A stretch of 14,599 nt of DNA, from NCBI GenBank assembly GCA_001179505.1, contig CDMY01000866.1, positions 1 to 14,599 on the forward strand. Reading direction: 5' to 3'. Shown here in pieces: positions 1-14,599 of the stretch. Every line of letters begins with the position of its first letter. Within the stretch, counting starts at the first letter, position 1. The translations under genes were made by a program, and so were the position numbers. The DNA comes from Vitrella brassicaformis CCMP3155. Taxonomy: Eukaryota; Protista; Chromerida. The notes beneath the pieces are model-generated. The model did no database searches and was not told where the DNA came from. It saw only the letters and a program-made list of their open reading frames with translations.

Positions 1-41
1 ACGACTTCATCGCCGAGACGAGACCGGGGATATTTCTCTAA
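1..41 (+). CDS. Possible 3' end of an upstream gene (..DFIAETRPGIFL*), truncated by the window edge
   Basis: Frame starting at base 3 reads GAC TTC ATC GCC GAG ACG AGA CCG GGG ATA TTT CTC TAA with GC3-rich codons like the other host genes. Too short to identify. Confidence 0.25.
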   Translation, partial: DFIAETRPGIFL

Positions 42-289
42 AGCAGAACGAAGGGACAGAGCGATGCCTCCCGTTCGTGTGGGGTGATGGTGGCAGTTAT
101 TCTTTGTGCGGGCCCGTAAAGACTCGCATATGTGCCACTCGTGGCGGTTGGAGCTCTGCTGGGTTGCGGATCTGCCTCATGGCGGTTGGAGATCTCTCGG
201 ATCTAACGGATGCATCACGTGCCGCTCTATCGTCCGTACCTCCCTGCACCTCTTCTCTTGCCTCGTCCCCTCTTCTCTAGCCTCGTCCG

Positions 290-2053
290 ATGATGGTCTC
301 TTCTTCTTTTGTCGTCGTGCTGACTGTGGTGCTGCTGGCCGGCAGTGCCGTCGCCATACCTGAAGCTGCCTTCCTCGGCCAACATGAGCAAGAGACGACG
401 ACTCCCGCTCCCGAGTCGGCTCCCTGCCCAGGTAAGCTGTCTTCCGACGCATTCACCTTCTGTGCACTGGATGGCCTTGTTGTGTTCCAGGTGAAGTGAC
501 GCGTATCAACGGGTCGATCGACGGGGTCCTTGGCACCGAGCAGTTCGGCCCGTTCACCTACGCATCTGGAGATGTGGCTCCCTTCCTCATTGTGGCGCTG
601 GACGCAGTAGTGGGCGACATGGGCCTTGTCGTGTATGACGCTGACGACGGGTGAGGGGATGTTGATGGGACCATGAGCCAGCCCCACAAATGTTTGTGTT
701 TGTATGCTGTGATGTACCATGCAGTGAGATCGATGAGAGCTTCTCCGCGTTCACCTTCAAGGAGAGCGACACGCCCGCCAACTACGAGCACGCCGTCAAG
801 GTCAACACAGCCGATTTCGGGGGCCAAGACGGGGTGATAGTTGTCGTGATCTGCCTGGCCAAGACGTGCCAATTCGTAACTAAGACACAAATGCATCCCA
901 TCTTGTCGTCGATGCGTGGCTGTTGTTGCTCGTCTAGGATCTTCTGGTCTTTGAGCACACGGGGTTTTGTGAGCCTCAGCTCAAGCCCGGCGAGACGATC
1001 ACAGGTGGGCAAGATGTGTAGCTGTGATCGTAGCGCTGTTTGTCGTTGCGTATGCAGGCGTCTGCACGTCCATCGCTCTATTCGTGCCCACTCTGGACGT
1101 CCCGCCATCCCTGGAGGGCGAGCCACTCGCGACGATCCAGTCGCGGCCCGCCAAGACCAAGGTACGACACGGACAGACACGCCACGCAAATGGACAATGA
1201 AAGCACTGCGTCACTCGTGTCTTCCACGTGACGTCAGGCACTCTCGACAAAGCTCAACATGAAGAAGCCGAAAGGTGAGTCAACTTGATGGCCGCACAGT
1301 CCACGACTGGATATACGAATCATCCCTCTGTGCGTCCATCACATGCTCATGATGTAGCAGCATCTGCTCGCCGGGAGGTGGAGGGCCTGTTCGGTTGCCC
1401 CCTTCTGACTGCGCTCCTCGAGGACAGCGAACCAAACAACGCCACGGGCAACCCCACCGCCAACATTGTACAGGTGGGTGAGAGAGGCAGACATCATCTC
1501 TTCTGCGTGTTGCCGGAATTCTGCTCTATTAATTTTTGATCAGAACGGCACTGATCAATCTCTGCTGGTGGACCTCCCCTTCGCTCTCGCGAGTGGCTTC
1601 CCTCAAGTGGTGGTCGCGGCCAACTCAGTCCAAGGCAATGCCAACCTCATCGCGGCCGTAGATGAGTACGAAAGACAATGATGGAGGGCATATGTCTGTC
1701 TCTGCATGTGTTGGTGTGCCTCTGCAGCGAGCCCTTTGGCGTGTCTGAGAATCCGTCTGGAGAGGCCGACGCCGTGTACGAAGATGCGCTGATCGTGCCG
1801 ACCGATGCTGGAAGCAAACTGGAAGTGTTCGTCACGGCAGCTGACGGCGAAGACGCCAATGCGGTACGGATGCACACGCAGCCCTTCCTCCTCCACTTAG
1901 GTCATGTGTGTATGTCATGTGCACGCGGATGTGTGGCGTGTGCAGGAAGTGGTGGTTCTGCTCTTCGACGGGGCGTGCACCGTCCCCTTCGAAATCACAC
2001 CCGTGGATGTCCCTACTGTCCCGGTTTCTGACGGTGGGGGCGCCGAGCGATGA
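290..2053 (+). CDS. Secreted protein of unknown function, ~380 aa, 10 exons, with two internally repeated beta-rich domains
   Basis: Hand-spliced exons 290-431, 491-650, 725-875, 938-1004, 1058-1161, 1238-1274, 1358-1473, 1544-1665, 1728-1863, 1946-2053. All introns are GT..AG, phases are compatible, total 1143 nt with no internal stop, ending ..DGGGAER*. N-terminus MMVSSSFVVVLTVVLLAGSAVA is signal-peptide-like. N-glycosylation sequons NGS, NAT and NGT are present. Confidence 0.85.
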
Positions 2054-2841
2054 GGCGACAAACCAAGACAAATTCATATGGGATGGGACACGCATATTCA
2101 TCTTGTGTTCATGTATGTCGACTCTGTGGTTGATGGGCCTGAGCGAGATTTTCCTGAGACCTGCCAATGGACAGTGTGTCTCTCTCGCTGCGGGTTTCGG
2201 CTTTTCCAACACCGAATACATTCTTGTTTCTTCTCAGTGCCTAACGGCGGAATAGCGGGCCTTTCTGTCCATTTTTGCCATGTATCTATAGTGCGGCCTA
2301 CTGGACTGTGTGTACGACACCACATCACTCTGTAGACGTGTCTTTGAGGCGTCTTTGAGGTCGCTTTGCTGGCTCTTTGACTTACTGATGTGTGTTGCTG
2401 CGTCGCGGGCGACGGGAACAAGGGGTAGGGGTCGCGGGGCGATGACACAGTGTATGGGAGGGGGTTGACGCAGTGGGCGGCAAAGTTTGGCGCGGCTGTT
2501 TTGTCGGAGTCCGCCGTCCGCCTCACTGACTGCTCAAATGCACTCACACGCACCACTGCTCTCCTCAGCAGAGCACATAGTGGGATGCGGGCATATGTAA
2601 GGGACTGCATGACGCTGCGATGTTGGGAAAGAAGGGAAGGTCAAAAAGGGCCGGTCTCTTCAATTAGCTACCTTAACGGGAGGGACAAACACGTCTGTTG
2701 GATCAAACACTGTACACGTACAATCAAAGCCATCGAAGACTGAAAAGATGAGTGTCACGTTCCAATGCAAGTTTCTTCCCGACACACAAGGAAATGGTGG
2801 CTGCAATCGCTATCTCCTTCGCATCCAGAAAAAAGAAGGTG

Positions 2842-2930
2842 TATGAGTTGATGTGTCGCGCTATGAGTTGATGCTTTGTGGAATGCACTCAACTCATAGC
2901 GTTCCACAAAGCATCAACTCATAGCGCAAC
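2842..2930. repeat. Perfect 26-bp inverted repeat (hairpin/cruciform) built from a TATGAGTTG sub-repeat
   Basis: gcgctatgagttgatgctttgtggaa (2858-2883) is the exact reverse complement of ttccacaaagcatcaactcatagcgc (2902-2927). Extra copies of the core lie at 2842-2853 (forward) and in the 18-nt loop (reverse). Confidence 0.9.
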
Positions 2931-3054
2931 GGCAGAGACTGTCTCTCATGAAATGAGGTGTGTCAATCGACCAACCCTCAAACACGCGACAAACATGCCA
3001 GCACCATCCTCACCGCCCGCTGGCGCATCTCCCTTCCCATCATGTCTTGTTTCG

Positions 3055-3270
3055 TTAGGACCTAATGAAGCTGAATGGACAGGTCTCGGCCAACGAGAAT
3101 CCTACGAACGCCCTCAGAGACGCCTGTGAAGGATAGTACAGCGGCATCTTCCCAATAAACCTCTCGTCGTCTGGTCGAGTGGCTTCCGCTGCCGGAGCTC
3201 CGGGTCGGTCACCTTGCAGCCAAAAGGTGTGGATGTCCAGAGCAGCATCTCGGCCATCGGCGGCGAGTTT
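3055..3270 (-). pseudogene. Orphan 3' fragment of a CR (Crinkler/RHS-type) REase-domain paralog
   Basis: Translates ..LDIHTFWLQG..MPLYYPSQASLRAFVGFSLAETCPFSFIRS*, matching the C-terminus encoded at 3635-3860 (LDIHTVWMQ..LYYPSQASLRVFVGFSLAETCPFSF; 24/25 identical in the last block). No upstream NTPase/REase exons; similarity stops at short direct repeats near 3275. Confidence 0.75.
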
Positions 3271-3274
3271 CGCA

Positions 3275-3340
3275 CATGAAATGTAATCGAACACTTCTCG
3301 CATGAAATGTAATCGATTTCAGAGTATACTCAGAGTATAC
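3275..3340. repeat. Short direct repeats at the break point of the gene fragment
   Basis: catgaaatgtaatcga at 3275-3290 and 3301-3316; cagagtatac at 3320-3329 and 3331-3340. Confidence 0.8.
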
Positions 3341-3634
3341 ACAGAGAACTGGCCACGAAATGTGTTAGTCCCCGTTCCGTCAAGACTCTTCAGTCCCGAA
3401 CATCCAGACCTCCAAAATCACATAATAACATGTCCCAACAACAAGGACCCATGTCACTTTGCTTCGTTGTGAGACACGAACCCATCCACTCAAATTCAGT
3501 GATCATGCGCACAGCTCACATGAACTACTTAGGAGAAAAAAAGAAAGATCTGACAGGTAAAATGTCAAGCAGCAGAAGGCCATCCATCTATCTCAGGCGA
3601 CCGTCAACGTTGACGGTCCCCCCGCATCCCTCAC

Positions 3635-6158
3635 TCATGCTCGTCCCGTTAAGAAGCTGAATGGACAAGTCTCCGCCAGGGAAAATCCCACGAACACCCT
3701 CAGAGACGCCTGAGAAGGATAGTACAGCGGCGTGCCGTTGATGTCGTCCGTTTTGTCAGGTCGAGCAGCTTGATCTGACTCAGCCTTGGCTGTGTCAAAG
3801 GAAGTCGGTGCATCGATTTGCATCCACACGGTGTGAATGTCCAGGCCATCGAGAAGACCCTCAATTCTCGAGGGCCTGGAGAGCCCGCTCGATCGTTGGC
3901 TTCCTGCTGTCCGGGGAGTCAGTCGTCTCTTTGCACTGGTAGCCCCAGATGTGCCGCAGCTCCCCGTCCTTGACGACGAAGACAAAGAAATCCCAGCCCT
4001 CGAATTGGGGGTTCTTGGGCTTGACGAGGTAAGACACATAGCCTTTGTTCAAGTCTTTGCGCACTCCATCGCCATTGAACCACTCGATGAGCTGCGGCAG
4101 GTCCCTCACTGAATCTAGCGATTCCACAAAGCCTCCAAAAGGACAGCCACGACCACTTGTCACCGGAGGCGACAGAAGGGCTGATGGTATGCCGGTCAGC
4201 AACGATGTGGGCGACTCGGATCCATCCATTGCCGTAATGTGGCTGTCCAGCAGTCGCAGAAGTACTGCAGCCACCGCCACCCCCTCCCAGCGCTTTCCAG
4301 AGCCTCGGGGCTCCAGCAGCTGTCTCAGGAATCGGTCCACCTCGCCGACATCGGCAGCAAACTGGTAGCCAAGCTGCTCCTTGACATAGATTGACGTGCC
4401 CAAGTCCTTGCAAGCCTGGCCCAGGTAGCAGGGAGGCCACACTCATCCATTACCATAGACGTCCAGATTCGCCGCCATCGTGCCGAGCGACTCAATGTAT
4501 GGGGCCTGAGGCGAGGGAGCCTTTAGCTCCCCCACAATCGCCGAGCGGATGACAGCTTTGGCTGTAGATGCGTCGACAATCGATGTGCTTTTAGAGAAGT
4601 AGTCCAGCACATCGTCCGCGTCGCGGGAGGTCGCGCTCTGTAGGTACAGCTGGAAGAGCAGCGCAGGTGCTCGGCCAGTCCAGCATATCTCCCCTGAAAG
4701 GCAAACATAAAAAGCAGATACTCAGAGCAAGCTTCCTCAGCTTGTTCTTTGCCAAAATCTCACCCTGGTCGGCGGAGGGGCTGATGGCCGCTGCCTCTTT
4801 TAGCGTCTCGATACGCGGGATTTGGACCTTGTAGACTGTGCGGCCGCTTCGGTTGTGCATCCAATAATACCCGATGCTTCTCCCCACGGTAGCGACGTGA
4901 CTACTGAAGATGAAGAAGCGATCTTTCGGGCTCAGGCAGCTGGACCTGATAAAGCCAGCCACCGCTTTCGCCCCCATCGGGTCCTCTGATCCCTCCAAAT
5001 CCAGTGTCGCCAAGGTCTCCTTCGTGAGAAGCACGTTGAGCTCATCCACGATGAGTATGAGGGGACCGATGAGCCATCTCTTCAGAAGAAGCGGATCAAG
5101 AGAGACGTGGTCTCTCCAGTCTTCAAACGAGATGTCACCCGGGTCCTTGCCGATCTGCTTCGCCAGACTCGCGACCGTCTCCTCTGTTGCACACGCCCAC
5201 GTCATCCGCAGCACCATCGAGTCCAGCAGAGTCAACTCGCTGCGCTTGTGGAGGTCTTGCTCTGCCTCTGACATAGCGGTTCGTCCACTGAACGTGATGA
5301 AAAGCACCGGCTTGCCCTTCCGTTGCAGCTCGGCCCCGAGCACCTTCAGACACCGAGTTTTGCCCCCTCTCGCGAACCGCGTCAGCGCCGGAGGGCCCAC
5401 CCGCAGGACATCCGTGTCAGCGAGCTCGAATAGGTGTAGAATTAAGTTCTCGACCTTTTGCTGCACTTTTTCGAGGCCGACGTACACATCAGGCTCTGGA
5501 CGGCAGACTGTCGTCTGGACGGACGGGGAGTCTGAGGCGAGTGTGGGCACAAGTGGAGAGTCGCGCTGACTGCTTGAGTCCGTGAGCTTGTCCAGTGAGA
5601 TGAGGTGGCTTTCTGTGATCGGAAAGTCGCGAAAGCGGCGGGCTTGTCCAACACCGGCGTCTGCATAGTCATACGCAAACACATCGAAGGAAGAAGTGGC
5701 GCACATGCTCATTGGGCTTGTCCTGTCCCCCGTCATCCTCACTCATGTGAAGGACGCGAAGTGAGCTGCCCGCACGGTGAGAGATAAGGTGTGTGCGTCT
5801 GTTGAGGGCCCGGCAACGGTACAACAACGACGGCCGCAAACCTGTCACGGATGCAGACAGACATGCAGTCCAACAGTCGTGATTGTGCAGTCCCATTTTC
5901 AATACTTAAATACCTGAGGTGCTCTTGCGAGTCATAGCCGAGTGCGGAGATACGAACGCTGAGAGATCTTGATGACCTGCAAGGGTGCATAAGCAGGCAG
6001 ATCAACCAGGGAACCAGTGGACTGTGAACCATGAGGGTGCACTCACGTTCGCCGTGAACAGACGAAACAGACGAAACAATCATCATCGCTACGGTCCACA
6101 CCAGGATGGCCATCAGGAGACGATGAGGCAGAGTGAGGTGGAGCAACCTGCTGCTCAT
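3635..6158 (-). pseudogene. Crinkler/RHS-type (CR) effector-like gene: leader + P-loop NTPase + PD-(D/E)xK restriction-endonuclease fold; one in-frame stop and one frameshift
   Basis: Exons 6158-6047, 5976-5914, 5841-5743, 5660-4764, 4693-3635, all with GT-AG phase-1 introns. Walker A-like LTRFARGGKT, Walker B LILIVDELN, REase-like NPQFEGWDFF..WGYQCK. In-frame TGA at 4445-4443 (..YGNG*VWPPCYL). +1 frameshift near 3870: QALEN* ends one frame while IEGLLDGLDIHTVWMQ continues in another, and that segment is homologous to the 3055 fragment. Family assignment is from motif recognition, not a search. Confidence 0.75.
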
Positions 6159-6337
6159 CCTGCGATTAGAACACATACAGATCCCGCATACATATCGTTG
6201 ATCAGTGTGCTGTGGTGGCGCCCACCGGTTTTTTGAGAAGACTCCACTGGTGTGGTCATTACCAGCAGCAGTTTCAGGCAGTACCCTAGGCGGCCTGGCC
6301 GTATGCCTGTCCCGGTTGGAGATCTGCTGCGGTTGCG

Positions 6338-6617
6338 AGTAGTACTTATACAACGGATTTCCAATACTCGCTTCGCTCGCATTGAGAACCCCTTGTATGG
6401 GTTTTTCTGGGGTTGTAGGGTTCAAAACCCAGAAACCCCAAAAGAATGATGTTTCACAAGAAGTGAATGTGGATTCACCCTGTGGTCACACCCTGTGGTC
6501 AGTACGCAGACGTATATATGTATGTCTTTCATTCATTTAGTTGGCCATCGTCCATCAGGTCGTCCGATATATAGACAAGAAATGTATGTATGTACATCGA
6601 GACAGATAGACACACAC

Positions 6618-6647
<30 letters not shown>
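6338..6647 (+). mobile_element. Dispersed non-autonomous repeat, copy 1 (hairpin + GACA microsatellite; DINE-1/HINE-like or Polinton-end-like)
   Basis: Starts agtagtacttatacaacggatttccaatactcgcttcgctcgcatt and aligns with 8019-8275 over ~270 bp, ending in a (CA)n/(GACA)n tract. Imperfect atacaacggattt / ccccttgtat stem. Confidence 0.7.
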
Positions 6648-6650
<3 letters not shown>

Positions 6651-6964
6651 TAAATGGCTGGTGTGCTCTGCCTCTCTCAGGTCATCTATCTCTGTCTCTC
6701 TCTGATTAGTCAGGTCACGTGTATTCATGTGTGTGTAGCTCAATCCATGTACTCACACCCTCTGTGCTCTCGTCACTACAGCAACAAGCATTTCATTGTA
6801 TTCACTCAATTGGCATGAATAAGCAAGCTGAGAGGCCCTAGCTATTGCAGTGAGGTCTTGTTGTATAGGCTCCTAACTATCATGCCAACCAGCACTCACA
6901 CCCAGACAGACACGCATATCAATGCAAGCAGACAAATAGGAAGACAGCAAGTCTGTAGCAAAGA

Positions 6965-6966
<2 letters not shown>

Positions 6967-6998
<32 letters not shown>
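6967..6998. repeat. (GA)n microsatellite
   Basis: Uninterrupted gagaga run of about 32 bp. Confidence 0.95.
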
Positions 6999-7002
<4 letters not shown>

Positions 7003-7089
7003 GGGGGGAACTTGTGTACTGAGGTAGCTGAACAAACCACCATATGCAATGTGAGAGACAGCAGGAAAGTGACCGCACACAGACATGGT

Positions 7090-7917
7090 CTATCCTGTCA
7101 ACCGGCGAAAGGCCAGTTCACAGCAGCAGCTCGCCAATACGTTCTCCTCCTTGTGAAACAGCTCATAGCCTTGTCCCTCAATGGCCCTGACCAGCCGATC
7201 AGCATCTCTCTCCCCCCAGCGGTCCATCAGATGCACCTCCACCTCTACCTCTCTCACTACTGGCCACCTGCCAATGCCGCTCCCACCCAGCGCATCAAAC
7301 TCTCCACCTTCAATGTCCACCTTAAGCAGCGATATCACTCGCTGCTCGTGGCCGAGCGCGAGCACGATGGCGGGCAGGCCGATGAATTCCGGCGACGGCG
7401 GCTGGAGAGTGAGGCCTGGGTCGTTAGCTGGGGCGGTCAGCAAGGGGTGGCCGACGCCGTAGGCGTGAAAAGTGACGCCTGGTGGGGCGGCTGGGGCGGA
7501 GACGAACGGGTCAAACGTCTGCATGGAGGACAAGAAAAGAGAGAGAAGGGAGTGGCCATGCGTGCGTCATCTTACGTGGATCTCGCACTCCGGAGCGATA
7601 TCGAGGATGGCCTGCTCAAAGGTCCACTCATTTTCGCTGCCGAATGAGTACACAAGGCAGCTCTTTCCCTCCTTGGCCAATTCTTCAGGCTCACACACCC
7701 ATTTGCCGCCATCCATGCTGTTGTTGGGGTCCCCACCAAGGCGCCGCTCGTTGTCGCAGTGCACCGAGGGCTGGTAGGGGCTCTGCTGCCAGAAGGTCGG
7801 GAGTTCCGCTGACCGCTCGGGGCTCGCGAGTAGGGGGCTGATGTCACGGTGGTCGAGCGGAATGATGGCGGGAAGGGTCCATACCCAAAGAGCGTTGATG
7901 AGCATCACCTTCTGCAT
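7090..7917 (-). CDS. SAM-dependent methyltransferase, Methyltransf_22 / METTL24-like family
   Basis: Exons 7917-7576 and 7518-7090 (phase-0 GTAAG..TGCAG intron). Family-typical motifs RLGG..DGGKWVC, CLVYSFGSENEWTFE, CEIHTFDP, LLKVDIEGGEF, EVEVH, LFHKEEN..CCCELAF. The start codon (MQKVMLINALWVW.., hydrophobic) is inferred. Confidence 0.85.
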
Positions 7918-7982
7918 CCTCCCACCCTCGCCCACATGGTTGCTTGGGGGCGAGGTAAGATCGCCGCGAATTCGATTGAGGC

Positions 7983-8275
7983 AGTAGTACTTATACAAGG
8001 GATTTCCAATACTCGCTTAGTAGTACTTATACAAGGGATTTCCAATACTCGCTTCGCTCGCATTAAAAATCCCTTGTATGGGTTTTTGGGGTTGTAGGGT
8101 TCAAAACCCAGAAACCCCAGAAATGGATTTGATTCTGACGAGGATTGAATATCAATTCACCCTGTGGTCAGTACGCAGACGTATATATGTATGCGTTTCA
8201 TTCATTCAGTTGGCCATCGTCCATCAGATCGCTCGATGTATAGACAAGAAATGTATGTATGTACAGACAGACAGC
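7983..8275 (+). mobile_element. Dispersed non-autonomous repeat, copy 2, with a 36-bp terminal tandem duplication
   Basis: agtagtacttatacaagggatttccaatactcgctt occurs twice (7983-8018, 8019-8054). Perfect 13-bp stem atacaagggattt .. aaatcccttgtat. The rest aligns with 6338-6600 and ends in gacagacag. Confidence 0.75.
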
Positions 8276-8300
8276 CAGACCGATACGACTCACACATGCG

Positions 8301-8548
8301 ACGCATCAGTCCGCCCAGATGGACGCACGCCCCTCCCTTCATCCCTCACGCAACACAGAGGTCACACACGCATCGCTCTGTCTATCCGTCTCGCTACACG
8401 CAGGCAGGCAGGTAGGCCGCCACACGCAGTCCCTGCCTCTCTCTCTTCGTTATGCATTAAGCAGGCGTCTATCCGTCTCGCTACACCAGGCACGTAGGCC
8501 GCCACACGCAGTCCCTCCCTCCCTGCCTCTACTACGCATCAGTCCGCC
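8301..8548. repeat. Local degenerate tandem duplication
   Basis: gtctatccgtctcgctacac..gtaggccgccacacgcagtccct at ~8380-8435 and ~8467-8516; acgcatcagtccgcc at 8301-8315 and 8534-8548. Confidence 0.8.
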
Positions 8549-8578
8549 TCGAAAAGAGGGCACGACAGACAGCCGAAT

Positions 8579-9312
8579 TCATTTCAACTTGCTCACTAAG
8601 TTCTCGCATCCCGCCATGATGCTTTTCCTCTCCTCCTCGGTCAACACGATGACACAGAAATCGGTCTGAACGCACTTGTTTTCCTTTGTAACCTACAAAC
8701 AAAACAGCGAGTCACTACACCTATTGTGTGCTGACACTACCTTGTTGGTCATGGTGGTGCTGCTGGTCGTGGCGGTGCTGCTGGTCGTGGCGGTGCTGCT
8801 GGTGCTGGGCTTGCTGGTGACAGCCTTGCTTTCCTCCTTGATGGCCTGCGACAGACAAAACATCAAGTGCACTTGTATATCTGTGTGTGTTTGCCTGCTT
8901 CGATGAGGTGTCCGTTTCTGTATTGCCCTTCGTAGTAGAGGGTCCCCGCTCTCAGCATTTTCAGCAGATCGCCCCACCCGTTGACGACTTCCTCGGCGAA
9001 CTCCCAGTTGGAGTGGCGGTCGATGCAGATGCGGAGCTCTACCGGATCGCCTGGCCCTCCCTTGTTGTTCTTCTCGTACCCGATCTTGACGACTTTGATG
9101 GGGTTGCTGGGACGCTCGGTGGTGTGTGGGGCGAATTTGCTGTCGCGGGCGAGCTTCTCGAAGTCTCGCCAGGTGAATTGCTGGTTGCCGCCCTTTCTGA
9201 ATTGGAAGCGTCTATCATGCGGGTCAGTGGGTGTCACCAGCGTGATCTCCTCTCCGTTTCTGCCGCGGTCGGTCTTCTCGCATCCCAATAGAATAGTCTT
9301 CCATTGTGCCAT
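8579..9312 (-). CDS. Hypothetical protein; N-terminal domain resembles the OB-fold of ATP-dependent DNA ligases, with a probable Ser/Thr-rich tail
   Basis: ATG at 9312 (MAQWKTILLGCEK..) opens ~145 codons. Candidate downstream exons 8845-8741 (AIKEESK..TSSTATTSSTATT..) and 8692-8579 (..LTEEERKSIMAGCENLVSKLK*) have good acceptors. The first donor is unresolved because only GC-type candidates occur near 8895; unspliced, the ORF stops at 8863. The fold call is visual pattern matching. Confidence 0.55.
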
Positions 9313-9390
9313 CGCGAGGGGAAAGCAAATGCGAGGGAAAGGGGGAAAGTCTGGGAGCTTGAAGCCAATGCGAGCTTTTGTGCAAGACCG

Positions 9391-9855
9391 ATGTCGGGAA
9401 AGCGAAAACATAGTGACGCTGATGATGTTGACGTAAGCATGAACGGCGGATCTGAGAGTGCGAGTGCCAAAAGCGAGGCCAGACCGAAGAAACGTGGTCG
9501 TCCACCAAAGCCCAAGCCGGAGGAGCAGCCCAAGCCGGAGGCGGAGATGGAGGATGAGCCAAAGAAGGACACGAAGGCCATGAAGATCCTGAAGAACTTG
9601 ATGCAAGTCGAACAAGACCTCACCACGGCCGAGGAGACGAAGAGAGCACACGAAGAGGGGGTGCAGAAGTGCGACGAGGACATCAACAAGCTCATGCCGA
9701 AGAAGCAGAAACTGATGGACGACCTGATCAAAGCAAACAAGCAAAAAGACGTCCAGGAACTTTCTACCGCCGCTGGTGCTGCTGCTGCTGATGGCAATGG
9801 CGGACAGAAGGACGGGAAGAAGGAGGGTGAGGGGAATGGAGAGGAAGACAAGTGA
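9391..9855 (+). CDS. AT-hook + coiled-coil, probably nuclear DNA-binding protein (154 aa)
   Basis: MSGKRKHSD.. (NLS-like), AT-hook core KKRGRPPK, heptad-like helix (KILKNLMQVEQDLTTAEETKRAHEEGVQKCDEDINKL..), GC3-rich codons, TGA at 9853-9855. Confidence 0.75.
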   Translation: MSGKRKHSDADDVDVSMNGGSESASAKSEARPKKRGRPPKPKPEEQPKPEAEMEDEPKKDTKAMKILKNLMQVEQDLTTAEETKRAHEEGVQKCDEDINKLMPKKQKLMDDLIKANKQKDVQELSTAAGAAAADGNGGQKDGKKEGEGNGEEDK

Positions 9856-10384
9856 GGGCGGAGGTGGGGTGCGCGAAGGCGGGCAGGGATGCTGCATGTA
9901 TTTCGTCTGTGCGTGTTGACTCACGACCCACTTGTCTGTGACGTTCCGTCTGTATGTGTTGACCTCTGACCCGTTTGTGTCCCAACGATGTACACACGCA
10001 CGAGCACTCTCTCTGTCTCTCCGTGAATCGACCGACTTAGAACAGCGTGTGAAAGCAAAACTGGTGCCTGCCTGCATGCACGCACACATCCACACGGACA
10101 CGTAATATTGACAGACAAAACGGGCAATCGCATTCACACACAGATAAAAGGCACGATGCACGTGCAGTCACGAGCCGAAAAAGCTATGTGTGTGTGCGTA
10201 GATAAAGCTCATGAGTCGCAGGCACTGCAATATGCTACATTATGTGAGGCCTTTGGGAAAATGGCACTCACTCGCTTTCTCCTCCCTCACCCGACACACG
10301 CACTCGCTCCCACCCCACGGCACACGCACTCGATCCCTCCCTCACACGCACACGCATTCCCTCCCTCCCCAACTCGTGTGCAGC

Positions 10385-11650
10385 TCACTGGGTGAGGTCA
10401 ACAACGCTGCTGCTGCTGGCGGTGTTGGTGTTGGTGTTGGTGGGCGTGTTGTTCGGGTAGATGTGCGACAGCAACAAACGGGCACGGCAGAACGGACACT
10501 TGCGGTTGCGTGTCGACGAAAACACTGCACAATCCTCACACAGCTTGCTCTGGCAGCACGTGGGGGTGATGAACGCCGTCTGAGGCTTGGGATTAGTGCA
10601 GATGACACACTCGACCAACTCGGGCTGGTGGTTGGTGCCGTCCGTCAGCTGGTTGTTGGTGCCGTGGTTGGTGCCGTTCGTGAGGTAGTTGTTGGTGCCG
10701 TTCGTCAACATGGTGCCGGTGTCAGCGTCCTCCATCGCCACATTGTCTGATAAGCCACAAGCCATTGTGTGTGCGTGTGTGTGTGTGTGGTGTGTGCGTC
10801 CGTGTCGTCATACTCACCATCCAGTTCGTGTTCTCGAACTTCTTGCTCGTACGGGTTGATGTCACACACACGCTCCTCATAGTTGTTGCACCACTGCACG
10901 TACTGAAACTGAAACAGAACACATGCATGATAGATAAATGAATGCGAAAGTGCTGGTTGACTTACCGATTTGCCGGTGTTAAACGCACACTCGAAGCAGA
11001 CGTAGTTGTTCATCTGCCCGTACAGCGAGTGGATGCGTGTCAGATACTCCTTGGTGATGTCGTTCACACCACTCGGAACATAGAACTCAAACGCCTGAAC
11101 ACACACAAAGCACACAGATGAAACCACAGGTGTACGCATAAGCAGACGCTTTGTGTCCCACCGTGTGGTCTCGGTGCTGACTGCAAAACACCCCTCCACA
11201 CAGCTTGCACCAACGCACGTAGCCCGCTGGCACCTTCTCGTTGCACCCGTACGCCCCGCACGTGCGTGGCTTCTTCTTGCCCGTGAAGATGTCGATGTCT
11301 TGCTCGGGAGGAGCGTTGAATTGCCCCTGGATGGTCTCCAACGCCCGTGCGAGGTTGTTGCTCAACACCTCATTTTTGAACGTCTTGAAGTCGAGGGTCT
11401 TGGTGCGGTCGAGGTCACCCCGAAGCTCTTTGAGCGGGTTGAACGTCAGCGTGAGGTCGGGGCGGGTGGGCAGGCGGGCAGTCAGGCCAAAGGAAGCCCA
11501 ATCGTACCACGACTTGTGTGTGACGCGTGCGGCGGGTGCGGCGGCTGCGTCGACGGGTGCGTTGGCGATGGGCAACATGCTGGTGAGGCAGGATGAAAAG
11601 AGCGTTTCATGCGCGTCTAAAGCTCGCATAGCTCGCACCAAAGCTCGCAT
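10385..11650 (-). CDS. FYVE-like zinc finger + C-terminal RING finger protein (putative E3 ligase), 4 exons
   Basis: Exons 11650-11162, 11094-10966, 10908(or 10902)-10818, 10746-10385; GT-AG with compatible phases. The spliced product has CGAYGC..WCKLCGGVFCSQH..YVCFEC (FYVE-like spacing) and CVIC..TPTCCQSKLCEDC..KCPFCR (RING). The start could be a later ATG (MLPIANAP, 11578). Confidence 0.8.
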
Positions 11651-11887
11651 TGCCGCAGTTTTACGGAAGTTCCATAGAAATGTGCCCTAACTCACAAAGT
11701 CGATCCATTGACTCGATCCAAAAAAAATATATGTGGTGGTGGTGGTGGTTTCGTTTATGGGGACCTTGCCCCCCCCCTTCCCGAGTCTTTTGTGAGTCCG
11801 ATTCATGTACACTGGCCACACACGATCACACTCCAATCGACCGATCGCACGCCTCTGTGTCCTCAGCCTTTGCACGGTTTCACGGCG

Positions 11888-12000
11888 GCTACCCTACGCA
11901 TCCTAGTGCCACTCCTCGGCTGGTCCTCGCGGCGCGTCCAGTGAGATCCCTTTGCAGGCAGTCCAGTGAGATCCCTAGGGTAGCTAGTCTAGACTCTCTC
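11888..12000. repeat. Repeat/palindrome cluster at the host to AT-rich junction
   Basis: gtccagtgagatccct at 11936-11951 and 11961-11976; gctacccta (11888-11896) is inverted to tagggtagc (11976-11984); palindromes ccctaggg and agtctagact. Confidence 0.7.
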
Positions 12001-12023
12001 CCGAAACTTGCACCATATATATA

Positions 12024-12713
12024 TCAATTTTTTATTTTTGGAATACCCCAATGTCCTAAATCACAATAGACAAGGTTAATTTTATCCTCATTTTTCATAG
12101 CTCGGTTATTAAGAAAAATGATTTTATAATTATCTGTTGCTCTATCAAAATGTGAAGCAAATTCTGTTTTTCGAATTTGGCCTGACCACAACTCGTCATA
12201 CAGAATATTTACATTAGAAATTCCGACCATTTTTCCGATCAGAAGAAAATCGGCATTGGAGCGGATGGCTACATCGATTTTTCTGATGCTCTGAACGATG
12301 ACGACGACTGTGGTATTTAAATGTCTTAGTGTGGTTGTGAGCTTAAGAAATTGTGGATCTCTTGTATTGATGTTTGAACCAAGTATATTGTCGAAAAATA
12401 ATAATACTCTGTTACTTTTTTTCTTTTTCTGATAATCAAATAGTCGATTTAGTTGTTCAAAGGTAAAATCATCATATTGCGCTCTTTTTTTAACACCTAG
12501 TTTATCCCAAAATTTGGTATGTATGGTAGGTGATACAATTATTTCAGTATCGAAATTTCTTTTGTTTTTCAGAAATTTATACAACGCTCCAATTAATAAT
12601 GACTTGCCACCGCATATTTTTGCGACACATACGATGAGGCAGGGAGTATTTTTGCTGATTGTTTTAAATACATGCTCGCATTCAATTGCTTCATTATTTT
12701 CTAAATCTGACAT
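12024..12713 (-). CDS. A32-like (FtsK/HerA superfamily) viral DNA packaging ATPase, 229 aa
   Basis: Walker A variant AKICGGKS (A-x4-GKS), IIVSPT strand, Walker B VLLFFD, arginine-finger/sensor block LRHLNTTVVVIVQS, and IRSNADFLLI. Size and motif order are typical of poxvirus A32 / Polinton / virophage ATPases. Intact and intronless. Confidence 0.9.
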   Translation of the reverse strand: MSDLENNEAIECEHVFKTISKNTPCLIVCVAKICGGKSLLIGALYKFLKNKRNFDTEIIVSPTIHTKFWDKLGVKKRAQYDDFTFEQLNRLFDYQKKKKSNRVLLFFDNILGSNINTRDPQFLKLTTTLRHLNTTVVVIVQSIRKIDVAIRSNADFLLIGKMVGISNVNILYDELWSGQIRKTEFASHFDRATDNYKIIFLNNRAMKNEDKINLVYCDLGHWGIPKIKN

Positions 12714-12734
12714 AACATAATAGTATATATATAA
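12714..12734 (-). promoter_or_regulatory. TATATA-rich intergenic box upstream of the ATPase; similar boxes at 14335-14350 and 12015-12023
   Basis: Minus strand: TAA-ttatatatatactattatgtt-ATG; gcatacatatatagata-ATG; TGA-tatatat-ATG. Confidence 0.4.
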
Positions 12735-14334
12735 TTAAACCATTTCTTGCGTAACAAATTTCGGTCGTTCTTCTGGCGAACCGGAACTAAAACTCCATCT
12801 ACGCATTTGATCTGCATAAAAATGGGGAGGTGGTAAAGTCGGAGCCGTTGGATCAGGAAATACATTTAAAGCAGGAGCAGAAGGTGTAGGCATACGAGGA
12901 GAGCGTGGTTGTGAAGTATCTCTTCTATATGCTTGACTTTCAATATCATGCAGTCTCTCTAAATCTGCCTTTGCTTTGCGTTTTGCTTCTGTTTCTTTGT
13001 TTTGCTGCTGCGTATCTCAGATTAGCTTCCAGATTTCGTTGTCTTTCTTTCACTTCTCTATCCCATCTTTCTCGTCGTTCTTCGACGGTTTCTGTCGCTT
13101 GACGCAAGCCGATGTTTTGAATTTGAGATGGTTTTTCTTTTGTAGAAATTAGTCTTGCACCCGTAGCTTTGTCGATATTTTTTCGCTGTAATTCTTGGCG
13201 GACTGCTCGTTGAGCTAATGTGGTATGCACTTTGACAGCTCTCAGTCTTTCTTTCATTTCTTGTCTTGTTTCTGGCAATGGATATGCTGGTTTTTTTTTG
13301 GGGGGTCAATTGCCTTTTCATATCTGCTCTTTTCTTTCAATTCCGCTTTATCTCTCATCTGTCTAGCCAAATTCATCTCTTCATCTTCGGGCAAAGGTTC
13401 AGAGTACGCTTGTGGTGATGCTTGTGCGGCAGAAGATGGCGATGATTGTGATTGTGTTCGCTCAATAATATTTAATGGAATTGGCCTGCCTTCCGCATCT
13501 GTTGTTGGTAAAGGATATTCCATTCTTTGAGACCAGCGTGGTGTTACAACAGGAGCATTCGGCTTTACAATCTCCATGGGTCTTGGACTTTCAATATCTG
13601 GATAAACTCCTGCATCGCTTGCAGGTGATGGGATGATAGGCTGAGGAGGAGGAGCAGGTGGAGGAGGGACAGGTGCAGGTGCAGGTGCTTGATTTTCGGG
13701 TATGGTTGGCAAAGGAATGTTTTCATGAGGAGGTGGTGGTTTTGTTTCCAGTAAAGGCTCAGGTCTAGCACCTCTATCTGGCACTTTGTCTTCTCCTTTT
13801 TTAATGTAACTATCTTTCACATCGAAAAACATGAATTCATTCGCTTTCTTTTTGCTTTTTAATATTTTACTTAATATCTTTTCGAGTTTTGGATTTTCTT
13901 TGTTTGAATATACAATAGAATTCTTGTGTAATTTATTACTTTTGATGTTGTTCTCAAGATTGGGTATGTCATCATTATTATTAATTAATATTCCTTCCAC
14001 ATTGTCATATTCCTTGTTGTTCCAATTCAACTTATATCCTTCGGGGAGCGAAAAAATAATTTGATTGTTTTGCAGTTTGAGCGTCTGGCTATAAATATCG
14101 CCTTCATCGGTCAGGAATTTTGGAAGTTTTTTTTTTTTTTACCTTATCGTTTTGAGAAGCCAGCTTTTCATCTTTGACTTCCTGTGGTTCAATCTTTATT
14201 GAGTCATCCTTTTTTTTGTCCTTTTGTGTTTTTGCATAATTAACTAAAAATGCCAGCCCCTTTAAATATCGATTTTTCTGCGGATCATCGTATTTAGCAT
14301 AAATGTTACTGACGTCTCTTTTAAATTCATCCAT
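12735..14334 (-). pseudogene. Single ~530-aa viral ORF (Lys-rich N-terminus, Pro-rich middle, coiled-coil C-terminus) split by three frameshifts
   Basis: ORF 14334-14104 joins via A14 (14140-14127) to LPKFLTDEGDIYSQTLK..YKLNWNNKEY, which is the 14030-13254 ORF (its 'start' is TTG). That joins via C6A9 (13305-13291) to KKPAYPLPETRQEM, the 13278-12946 ORF (its 'start' is also TTG). That joins near 13000 to KETEAKRKAKADLERLH..ERPKFVTQEMV* (TAA 12737-12735), 21 nt before the ATPase ATG. Confidence 0.7.
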
Positions 14335-14367
14335 TATCTATATGTATGCAAGTAAATTATATTATGA

Positions 14368-14523
14368 CTACCTGCGTTGATTTAGCAAAGCTTGTCCAGT
14401 TTTCAATCCAGCATCATCGTACGATTGTCTTTGCGTTTGCAAAGCAAGAGATGTGAGTTTGTCCGGAAGAACGGGGAAACTGTCATTAACCGTAACACTC
14501 GTCTGTGTGTCCGTGATACTCAT
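14368..14523 (-). CDS. Small ORF (51 aa, MSITDTQTSVTVNDSFPVLPDKLT..LLNQRR*) or the 3' end of a longer disrupted viral gene
   Basis: Below the ORF-track cut-off. Same strand as the other viral ORFs and stops 33 nt before the next ATG, matching the tight packing. Confidence 0.4.
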   Translation of the reverse strand: MSITDTQTSVTVNDSFPVLPDKLTSLALQTQRQSYDDAGLKTGQALLNQRR

Positions 14524-14599
14524 ACAAATACAGTCCCATCAGCACGCAGACCCAAACAGGCTCAAGGGGAGGAGGGATCAATCCCCGCCCCATCAGCAC

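What the first reader, a model, noticed from the sequence alone, without database searches (positions are those of the whole stretch)
12000..14599. Endogenous Polinton-like/virophage-type DNA virus fragment inserted among intron-rich protist genes
Seen: an abrupt drop in GC, loss of introns, same-strand ORFs separated by only 21-33 nt, and an intact A32-type packaging ATPase. Known: A32/FtsK-HerA ATPases of this size are core genes of Polintons/Mavericks, virophages, Polinton-like viruses and NCLDVs. Inferred: an integrated dsDNA virus of a probably chromerid-like host. Its other genes match nothing I recognise, so it may be an undescribed lineage. Capsid, integrase or polymerase genes would lie beyond the right edge or have been deleted.
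Basis: partly seen in the sequence, partly recalled or inferred. Interest (0 to 1): 0.85.

Follow-up and report, generated by a model that had tools for sequence, protein, structure and literature searches.

The report
Virus-derived DNA fragment in Vitrella genome
The last 2.5 kb of the window is a piece of a small Polinton-like DNA virus, with an open DNA-packaging ATPase gene, lying next to nuclear DNA of the alga Vitrella, a kind of viral insertion already recorded for this genome.

Summary
GC falls from 55% to 37% at about 12005-12015. Six ORFs, all on the minus strand, fill about 92% of 12005-14525. Their third-codon GC is 0.21-0.41, against 0.65-0.83 in the neighbouring host ORFs.

ORF 12024-12713 is a complete 229-aa A32-type packaging ATPase. 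It passes the Pfam Pox_A32 cut-off and gives a confident model. Its nearest solved fold is the STIV B204 packaging ATPase, not cellular HerA.

The host side is Vitrella brassicaformis or a very near relative: 2.9 kb is 94.8% identical to a CCMP3155 scaffold.

The closest ATPase relative (39% identity) lies on a compact metagenomic contig. That contig's 415-aa gene is about half identical to the capsid gene that Bellas et al. 2023 reported as a viral insertion in Vitrella. The window's rightmost ORF is only the C-terminal end of another gene of that contig.

No capsid, polymerase, integrase or terminal repeats are in the window. An independent assembly confirms the left junction over 60 nt; the right side is unresolved.

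Verdict: a truncated Polinton-like viral insertion, a new member of a known kind and of modest interest.

The parts
12005..14525 (-). Low-GC block: the virus-derived fragment, about 2.5 kb, with all its ORFs on the minus strand
   Evidence: GC 37% against 55% on the left. Identical to Logan contig L004, which equals window 11944-14502. The right bound is set where similarity to the L001 gene and the ORF end and GC returns to 56%.
12024..12713 (-). A32-type (FtsK-HerA superfamily) genome-packaging ATPase, 229 aa, open from start to stop
   Evidence: Pfam Pox_A32 30.9 bits, cut-off 22.8. 533 relatives found, the best at 39% identity. AF2 model pLDDT 92.3. Best folds are NCLDV A32-like ATPases and STIV/STIV2 B204. 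Walker A, the RH pair, the Q and the arginine columns are kept; one Walker B column is atypical.
12735..12893 (-). ORF of 52 aa, proline-rich, no known relatives
   Evidence: GC1/2/3 = 0.56/0.56/0.21, so the third position is AT-biased as in the ATPase. No Pfam hit.
12946..13278 (-). ORF of 110 aa (103 aa from the ATG at 13257), rich in Lys, Arg and Glu, no known relatives
   Evidence: GC3 is 0.27. Its ATG overlaps the stop of the upstream ORF by 4 nt. The Logan gene caller also called it as a separate gene.
13254..14030 (-). ORF of 258 aa, with an Asn/Lys-rich N-terminus and a proline-rich middle, no known relatives
   Evidence: GC3 is 0.29.
14104..14334 (-). ORF of 76 aa, lysine-rich, no known relatives
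   Evidence: An exact-sequence look-up finds it on the same three Logan contigs as the ATPase.
14368..14523 (-). Remnant (C-terminal end only) of a gene conserved in the related virus-like contigs L001 (190 aa) and L002 (202 aa). The gene is broken once, by loss of its N-terminal part.
   Evidence: 31 aa at 55% identity to residues 157-187 of the L001 190-aa product, E about 4e-8. The L001 and L002 genes are homologous to each other. The other minus-strand frames at the right edge show no similarity.
11650..12004 (.). Host-side flank of the left junction, holding a 16-nt direct repeat at 11936-11951 and 11961-11976
   Evidence: GC 49-60%. Repeat D6. The Logan contig reaches 60 nt into this flank and ends at 11944.
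14526..14599 (.). GC-rich sequence at the right edge, origin unknown (host DNA or another inserted element)
   Evidence: 56% GC in 14511-14599. The frame of the remnant gene holds stops here. There is no informative match in the window or in L005. The Logan contig stops at 14502.

Best explanation
The block 12005-14525 is a truncated piece of a small dsDNA virus of the divergent Polinton-like kind, integrated in nuclear DNA of Vitrella brassicaformis or a very near relative. Shown: foreign base and codon composition; six tightly packed same-strand ORFs; a complete A32/B204-type packaging ATPase; and a C-terminal remnant of a second gene that related virus-like contigs share. Inferred: in the parent virus the ATPase sits at a capsid vertex and uses ATP (P-loop lysine, Walker B, arginine finger) to pump the genome into a preformed double-jelly-roll capsid. 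In the host genome the fragment is passive cargo. The window holds no capsid, polymerase, integrase or terminal repeats, so the fragment can neither replicate, move nor form particles on its own. It most likely arose from a full or partial integration followed by loss or interruption of the rest. The unchanged AT-rich third positions, the open ORFs and an ATPase no more deviant than its relatives argue for a young insertion. One atypical Walker B column may mean the ATPase no longer hydrolyses ATP normally.
For: Composition step and codon bias. ORF lengths beyond all shuffles. ATPase family, fold and motifs. Host identity. Related contigs are compact and AT-rich, with GIY-YIG, DUF5754 and fibre-chaperone genes. 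The L001 415-aa gene matches 50 of the first 98 residues (counted by eye, no gaps) of the Vitrella capsid gene on CDMY01000484.1, which has an HHpred probability of 98.63% to an iridovirus capsid protein. Three capsid hits in this genome are on record, and the Vitrella element is placed with Tlr1, Hydrurus and OmPLV. Remnant gene. An independent Logan assembly of run ERR558149 reproduces 11944-14502 at 100% identity, so it spans the left junction by 60 nt. The same single version occurs in three run assemblies.
Against: No capsid, polymerase, integrase, terminal inverted repeat or target-site duplication is in the window. Only one junction is seen, and it is covered by just 60 nt in the second assembly, which may use the same reads as the original. 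The fragment lies at the end of the window, and both assemblies stop within 100 nt of each other, so a repeat or an assembly problem sits there. The Polinton-like label rests on linkage through a 39%-identical ATPase on one contig and on a by-eye comparison with a published sequence. Named Polinton-like, virophage and Maverick ATPases could not be brought in for a tree. The best structural matches are to giant-virus ATPases. Four of the six ORFs have no relatives anywhere searched.
Confidence: 0.72

Rival explanations
1. The fragment is the visible end of a much longer, perhaps complete, integrated virus. The rest lies beyond the right edge, separated by an inserted GC-rich repeat or by a break in the assembly.
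For: Bellas et al. 2023 (read) report that such insertions assemble badly from short reads, often end contigs, and can hold nested retrotransposons. In L001 the gene whose remnant sits at the window's right edge lies just downstream of the GIY-YIG and capsid genes on the same strand, so by that order a capsid gene could lie to the right. Both assemblies break within 100 nt of each other.
Against: The conserved gene loses its N-terminal three quarters exactly where GC rises to 56%. Gene order is not conserved between the window and L001: the ATPase orientation differs. No second version of the fragment turned up.
Confidence: 0.3
2. Assembly chimera or contaminant: the 2.5 kb comes from a free virus or another organism in the culture and was joined to a Vitrella contig by mistake.
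For: It sits at the very end of the window. Its composition is entirely foreign and unadapted. The right side is unresolved.
Against: A separate k-mer assembly of a sequencing run carries the junction with 60 nt of the GC-rich flank at 100% identity. The three run assemblies that hold these exact ATPase and 76-aa genes are all 2-5 kb contigs, and no longer free-genome contig was returned. One gene is truncated. Viral capsid genes inside long Vitrella scaffolds are already documented.
Confidence: 0.07
3. The fragment comes from a giant virus (Nucleocytoviricota) or a small relative such as a mriyavirus, not from a Polinton-like virus.
For: The best structural matches are A32-like ATPases of mimivirus-, medusavirus- and pandoravirus-type viruses. 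One related contig has a PCNA-like gene and another a 1474-aa gene. PMC12721341 places the Vitrella/Tlr1/OmPLV capsid clade between Polinton-like viruses and giant viruses.
Against: The structure library holds few Polinton-like proteins, so the ranking is biased. The ATPase is a bare 229-aa domain, like its 200-260-aa relatives. The L001 capsid gene is only 415 aa and belongs to the type that Bellas et al. and PMC12721341 treat as Polinton-like. No other giant-virus core gene is in the window.
Confidence: 0.12
4. The ATPase, and perhaps its neighbours, has been taken over by the host and is kept for a cellular role.
For: All ORFs are open. The ATPase is no more deviant at conserved columns than its relatives: 24 of 142 relatives deviate at least as much. 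The atypical Walker B column could mark a change of function.
Against: Codon usage is wholly unadapted. There are no introns. The neighbouring gene is truncated. No orthologue in another organism was found. Open ORFs are equally explained by a young insertion.
Confidence: 0.04

Closest known systems
Endogenous viral element of Vitrella brassicaformis CCMP3155 with a 417-aa capsid gene on CDMY01000484.1 (Bellas et al. 2023, PMC10120064, supplement; three capsid hits counted in this genome)
   Same: Same host genome or a very near one. The capsid gene on L001, the contig carrying the window ATPase's closest relative, is about half identical to it over the first 98 residues.
   Different: The window has no capsid gene. 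That scaffold could not be fetched, so it is unknown whether its element has an ATPase or the window's orphan ORFs. The window ATPase is only 39% identical to the L001 ATPase, so it may stem from a different virus.
OmPLV, endogenised Polinton-like viruses of Oxyrrhis marina, and the Tlr1/Hydrurus/Vitrella capsid clade (PMC12721341)
   Same: Alveolate host, low-GC insertions bounded by a GC drop, an A32 ATPase (PF04665), GIY-YIG in relatives, and fragmented copies lacking parts of the gene set.
   Different: OmPLV has 28 copies, terminal repeats in some, a tyrosine recombinase and a helicase-polymerase fusion. None of these is in the window, and only one version of the fragment was seen.
STIV / STIV2 B204 genome-packaging ATPase (PDB 4r2h, 4kfr-4kfu)
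   Same: Best solved-structure match both by profile (E 7e-12) and by fold (E 4e-8, TM about 0.6-0.7). Same size class and the same FtsK-HerA-type core.
   Different: An archaeal virus protein with 12-16% identity. It shows what the protein works like, not what lineage it belongs to.
A32-like packaging ATPases of giant viruses (Pfam PF04665; for example those of medusavirus and mimivirus relatives)
   Same: Pfam family membership and the best predicted-structure matches (E down to 5e-14, TM 0.73-0.76 over the query).
   Different: 14-22% identity. Those proteins are mostly 280-480 aa with extra regions and sit in genomes of hundreds of kilobases.
Polintons/Mavericks and virophages
   Same: They use the same kind of packaging ATPase and integrate in protist genomes.
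   Different: Their defining genes (protein-primed polymerase plus rve integrase and terminal repeats; or cysteine protease, penton and virophage-type capsid) are not in the window or in the related contigs examined.

Membership tests
A32-type packaging ATPase (Pfam PF04665, FtsK-HerA superfamily) | Scores above the family's curated cut-off | tested here: met
   30.9 bits against a cut-off of 22.8, though only profile positions 83-163 of 242 align.
A32-type packaging ATPase (Pfam PF04665, FtsK-HerA superfamily) | Walker A P-loop with the invariant Gly-Lys-Ser/Thr | tested here: met
   The Gly and Lys columns are invariant in 36 sequences and present in the window protein. Shares are 138/143 and 139/143.
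A32-type packaging ATPase (Pfam PF04665, FtsK-HerA superfamily) | Walker B with two consecutive acidic residues | tested here: inconclusive
   The first column is kept (141/143 share it). At the second column 140/143 share the family residue, and the window protein and two relatives do not. The effect on activity was not tested.
A32-type packaging ATPase (Pfam PF04665, FtsK-HerA superfamily) | Conserved Arg-His pair, Gln and arginine-finger columns after Walker B | tested here: met
   All are present in the window protein. Shares are 141, 134, 140 and 140 of 143.
A32-type packaging ATPase (Pfam PF04665, FtsK-HerA superfamily) | Fold closer to viral packaging ATPases than to cellular HerA, FtsK or VirB4 | tested here: met
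   Model pLDDT 92.3. The top 10 listed PDB matches are all STIV/STIV2 B204; TcpA and HerA follow from rank 16 at E-values about 100 times weaker. The profile search gives B204 at E 7e-12 and HerA at 6e-6.
Polinton-like virus, integrated | Double-jelly-roll major capsid gene in the element | tested here: not met
   None of the window's ORFs matches a capsid family or any L001-L009 gene other than the ATPase and the remnant. A capsid gene is present on the related contig L001. The single-sequence model of it was unusable (pLDDT 35).
Polinton-like virus, integrated | A32-type ATPase whose nearest relatives lie in small capsid-encoding virus genomes | tested here: met
   Best hit P0001 lies on L001, with a 415-aa capsid gene, GIY-YIG and DUF5754. 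The other near relatives lie on compact 24-39% GC contigs.
Polinton-like virus, integrated | Sharp compositional boundary with host DNA and a junction supported by reads | tested here: inconclusive
   The left boundary is sharp and is reproduced over 60 nt by the Logan contig. The right boundary is unresolved. Reads themselves could not be inspected.
Polinton-like virus, integrated | Terminal inverted repeats and/or target-site duplication | tested here: not met
   No inverted repeat links the two ends, and no flanking direct repeat was found. This is expected if the element is truncated.
Polinton / Maverick | Protein-primed family B polymerase and rve integrase | tested here: not met
   No such Pfam hit in any window ORF or in the related contigs.
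Virophage | Virophage-type capsid, penton and cysteine protease genes | tested here: not met
   No such match in the window. Dependence on a giant virus cannot be tested with these tools.
Giant virus (Nucleocytoviricota) insertion | Further giant-virus core genes beside the ATPase | tested here: not met
   There are none in the window. Only 2.5 kb is available, so this is a weak test.

The most novel reading that the evidence does not exclude
The fragment is the trace of a second, unsampled Polinton-like virus lineage that infects or very recently infected Vitrella, distinct from the capsid-bearing insertion already on record. Its ATPase shares at most 39% identity with any representative of about 15 billion proteins. 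Four of its genes have no relatives at all. Its unadapted codon usage and open ORFs suggest that the virus may still circulate in chromerids, the closest photosynthetic relatives of apicomplexan parasites.
Probability: 0.2. Interest if true: 0.5.

Novelty: new member of a known kind. Interest (0 to 1): 0.3.

Why it matters
Integrated Polinton-like viruses are now known to be common in protist genomes, and Vitrella already has three recorded capsid hits, so another fragment is not a surprise. Its value is local. It adds a packaging ATPase and a handful of orphan genes to the almost undescribed virus record of chromerids. It links a group of anonymous metagenomic contigs (L001 and relatives) to a known host lineage. 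Because it looks young, it hints that such viruses were active in Vitrella recently. It also marks a place where the Vitrella assembly probably breaks because of viral or repeated DNA.

Tried and rejected
Searches with the window ATPase that found nothing:
- The word-based protein search.
- IMG/VR and JGI metagenome scans.
- tblastn against phage records.

Names for relatives: 20 cluster look-ups gave no informative name.

Orphan ORFs: no match in Pfam, PHROGs, PDB sequences, phage records or the related loci.

Capsid of L001:
- No Pfam or PDB sequence hit.
- The word search found only the protein itself.
- No IMG/VR relative.
- A 45-nt degenerate search pattern, back-translated from a 15-residue stretch in which 11 residues are shared by the L001 product and the published Vitrella capsid protein (the 4 differing residues entered as N), found nothing in IMG/VR or JGI metagenomes.
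- The single-sequence AlphaFold model was too poor (pLDDT 35), so no fold search was run on it.
Full report
**Observation.** The window is 55.1% GC over 1-11990 and 37.0% over 12005-14510. The step is abrupt, with a likelihood change point near 12015.

The low-GC block holds six ORFs, all on the minus strand: 12024-12713 (229 aa), 12735-12893 (52 aa), 12946-13278 (110 aa), 13254-14030 (258 aa), 14104-14334 (76 aa) and 14368-14523 (51 aa). The gaps between them are 21, 52, 73 and 33 nt. There is also one 4-nt start/stop overlap if the ATG at 13257 is used. About 92% of the block is ORF.

The longest open frame is 294 codons. In 1000 shuffles of the block the mean was 95 and the maximum 174. Third-codon-position GC is 0.21-0.41 in all six ORFs. 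This includes the two whose overall GC is 42-44%, so the bias is frame-specific and the frames are real. In ORFs and exons of the left 12 kb it is 0.65-0.83. The last 89 nt of the window are 56% GC again.

**The ATPase.** The 229-aa ORF passes the Pfam gathering score for Pox_A32: 30.9 bits against 22.8. A full HMMER scan of 1.84 billion cluster representatives gave 533 relatives. Among the 150 best listed, most are 200-260 aa and the best is 39% identical. The word-based search had found none.

In an alignment of 143 family members, the window protein keeps these near-invariant columns: the Walker A Gly-Lys, the first Walker B acid, an Arg-His pair, a Gln and an Arg. At the second Walker B column, 140 of 143 sequences share one residue, and the window protein and two others do not. 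Over all eight columns that are at least 90% conserved, this is its only deviation. Of 142 relatives, 24 deviate at least as often, and at moderately conserved columns it is average. The gene therefore shows no general decay, but its catalytic motif is atypical.

An AlphaFold2 model built with 36 sequences is confident: pLDDT 92.3, pTM 0.89. Its best matches among predicted viral structures are A32-like packaging ATPases of giant viruses (E down to 5e-14, TM 0.73-0.76 over the query). Among solved structures the ten best are all the B204 packaging ATPase of STIV and STIV2, ahead of TcpA, HerA and VirB4. A sequence profile also finds B204 first, at E 7e-12, with HerA at about 6e-6.

**The host.** The 383-aa ORF at 4591-5742 finds proteins named for Vitrella brassicaformis CCMP3155, at 90% and 39% identity. 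The contig of the first, CDMY01000757.1 of assembly GCA_001179505.1, shares 2.9 kb at 94.8% DNA identity with window 3287-6229. That protein aligns to the window in pieces separated by a 61-nt intron. The left 12 kb is thus Vitrella, or a very near relative, and carries a paralogue of a known Vitrella gene. 'Chromerid-like host' was right.

**Relatives and their context.**
- The best ATPase hit, P0001, lies on L001, a 12.8-kb metagenomic contig of 32% GC. It has 18 closely packed genes, including a GIY-YIG nuclease, a DUF5754 protein and a fibre-like protein with a Peptidase_S74 chaperone domain.
- Other near relatives lie on similar compact contigs of 24-39% GC: L002, L003, L006-L010.
- These contigs share with one another a DUF5754 gene, a DUF5901-like gene and a GIY-YIG gene.
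- L001 also encodes a 415-aa protein. Read beside the 417-aa capsid protein printed in the supplement of Bellas et al. 2023 for Vitrella scaffold CDMY01000484.1 (50674-51927), it has 50 identical residues in the first 98 without gaps, by my count, and shared stretches continue to the C-terminus.
- That paper gives the Vitrella protein an HHpred probability of 98.63% to the capsid protein of an iridovirus (6OJN_B), and it counts three capsid hits in the Vitrella assembly.
[quoted passage not shown] It describes this as a divergent clade lying between established Polinton-like groups and giant viruses (PMC12721341).

I did not type the published sequence into any tool, so the identity figure is a hand count and not a computed alignment.

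**The other ORFs.** The 51-aa ORF at the right end matches residues 157-187 of a 190-aa L001 protein at 55% identity, E about 4e-8. That protein has a homologue on L002. The window holds only the C-terminal end of this gene. Upstream of it the frame has stops, no other frame shows similarity, and GC rises. This gene is therefore broken once, by loss of its N-terminal part. The 52-, 110-, 258- and 76-aa ORFs match nothing in Pfam, PHROGs, PDB sequences, phage records or the related contigs. No relative exists to say whether any of them is damaged.

**Integration.** Exact-sequence look-ups of the ATPase and of the 76-aa ORF find the same three contigs of 2-5 kb in Logan assemblies of single sequencing runs. 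The one shown, L004 from run ERR558149, is 100% identical to window 11944-14502.

- An assembly made independently of the deposited genome therefore carries the left junction with 60 nt of the GC-rich flank.
- It ends inside a 16-nt direct repeat on the host side.
- On the right it stops at 14502, just before GC rises.
- The window itself ends 97 nt later.
- Two assemblies breaking at nearly the same place points to a repeat or a branch there.
- No terminal inverted repeats or target-site duplication flank the block.

**Interpretation.** The evidence fits a truncated insertion of a small dsDNA virus of the divergent Polinton-like kind in Vitrella nuclear DNA.

In the parent virus the ATPase would drive genome packaging into a double-jelly-roll capsid. 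This is inferred from the family and from the B204-like fold, not shown. The fragment has no capsid, replication or integration gene and no termini, so it is passive. Unadapted codon usage and open ORFs suggest a young insertion.

- The main open point is the right side: either the element ends at about 14525, or it continues after an interruption or an assembly gap (confidence 0.3 for the latter).
- A chimera or contaminant is unlikely (0.07), given the junction in the second assembly and the truncated gene.
- A giant-virus origin is possible (0.12), because the clade itself sits between the two groups and no named reference ATPases could be brought in.
- Host take-over of the ATPase has little support (0.04).

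**Novelty.** Viral insertions of this kind are widespread in protists, and capsid hits in this very genome are published. The fragment has no capsid gene, so the capsid-based survey of Bellas et al. would probably not have picked it up. Its ATPase is distant from everything sampled. It is a new member of a known kind.

- Conservation is given as column shares and counts only.
It found nothing.
- No step needed referral.

Noticed in passing
window 3287-6229: A 2.9-kb stretch is 94.8% identical in DNA to Vitrella brassicaformis CDMY01000757.1 (L005 9060-11990). It is a paralogous copy of a gene for an AAA-type-ATPase-like protein (P0159 about 90% identical, P0160 39%), with a 61-nt intron at 4695-4755.
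   Followed up: partly
window 6338-6611 and 8019-8280: A direct repeat of about 278 nt at 83% identity lies within the host part. Its nature is unknown.
   Followed up: no
window 7983-8054; 6600-6648; 6968-6999; 10766-10796: A perfect 36-nt tandem duplication, and the microsatellites (AGAC)12, (GA)16 and (TG)16.
   Followed up: no
window 11936-11951 and 11961-11976: A 16-nt exact direct repeat lies 30-70 nt from the virus/host junction on the host side. The independent Logan contig ends at 11944, inside it, which may reflect copy-number variation of this repeat.
   Followed up: partly
window 11087-11650 (-): The last host-type ORF before the junction (GC3 0.72) has an AN1-like zinc-finger match below the Pfam cut-off: 21.2 bits against 27.9.
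   Followed up: no
window 2855-2930: A 76-nt stretch matches its own reverse complement at 84% (imperfect palindrome). A shorter one lies at 3596-3621.
   Followed up: no
L001 5707-6954 (-): This anonymous metagenomic contig encodes a 415-aa protein that is about half identical to the published endogenous capsid protein of Vitrella. The contig may therefore be a free or integrated virus of a chromerid-like host in the environment.
   Followed up: partly
L006 2163-2870 (+): A 24% GC contig with a related ATPase carries a weak PCNA-like gene (PCNA_C at 21.6 bits, just under the cut-off) beside DUF5754 and DUF5901 genes.
   Followed up: no
L003 816-3034: On this related contig (39% GC) the ATPase is followed by about 2.2 kb without called genes and later by a gene of at least 1474 aa that runs off the contig end. 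This layout is less compact than in the other relatives, so it may be an integrated copy in a eukaryotic genome.
   Followed up: no
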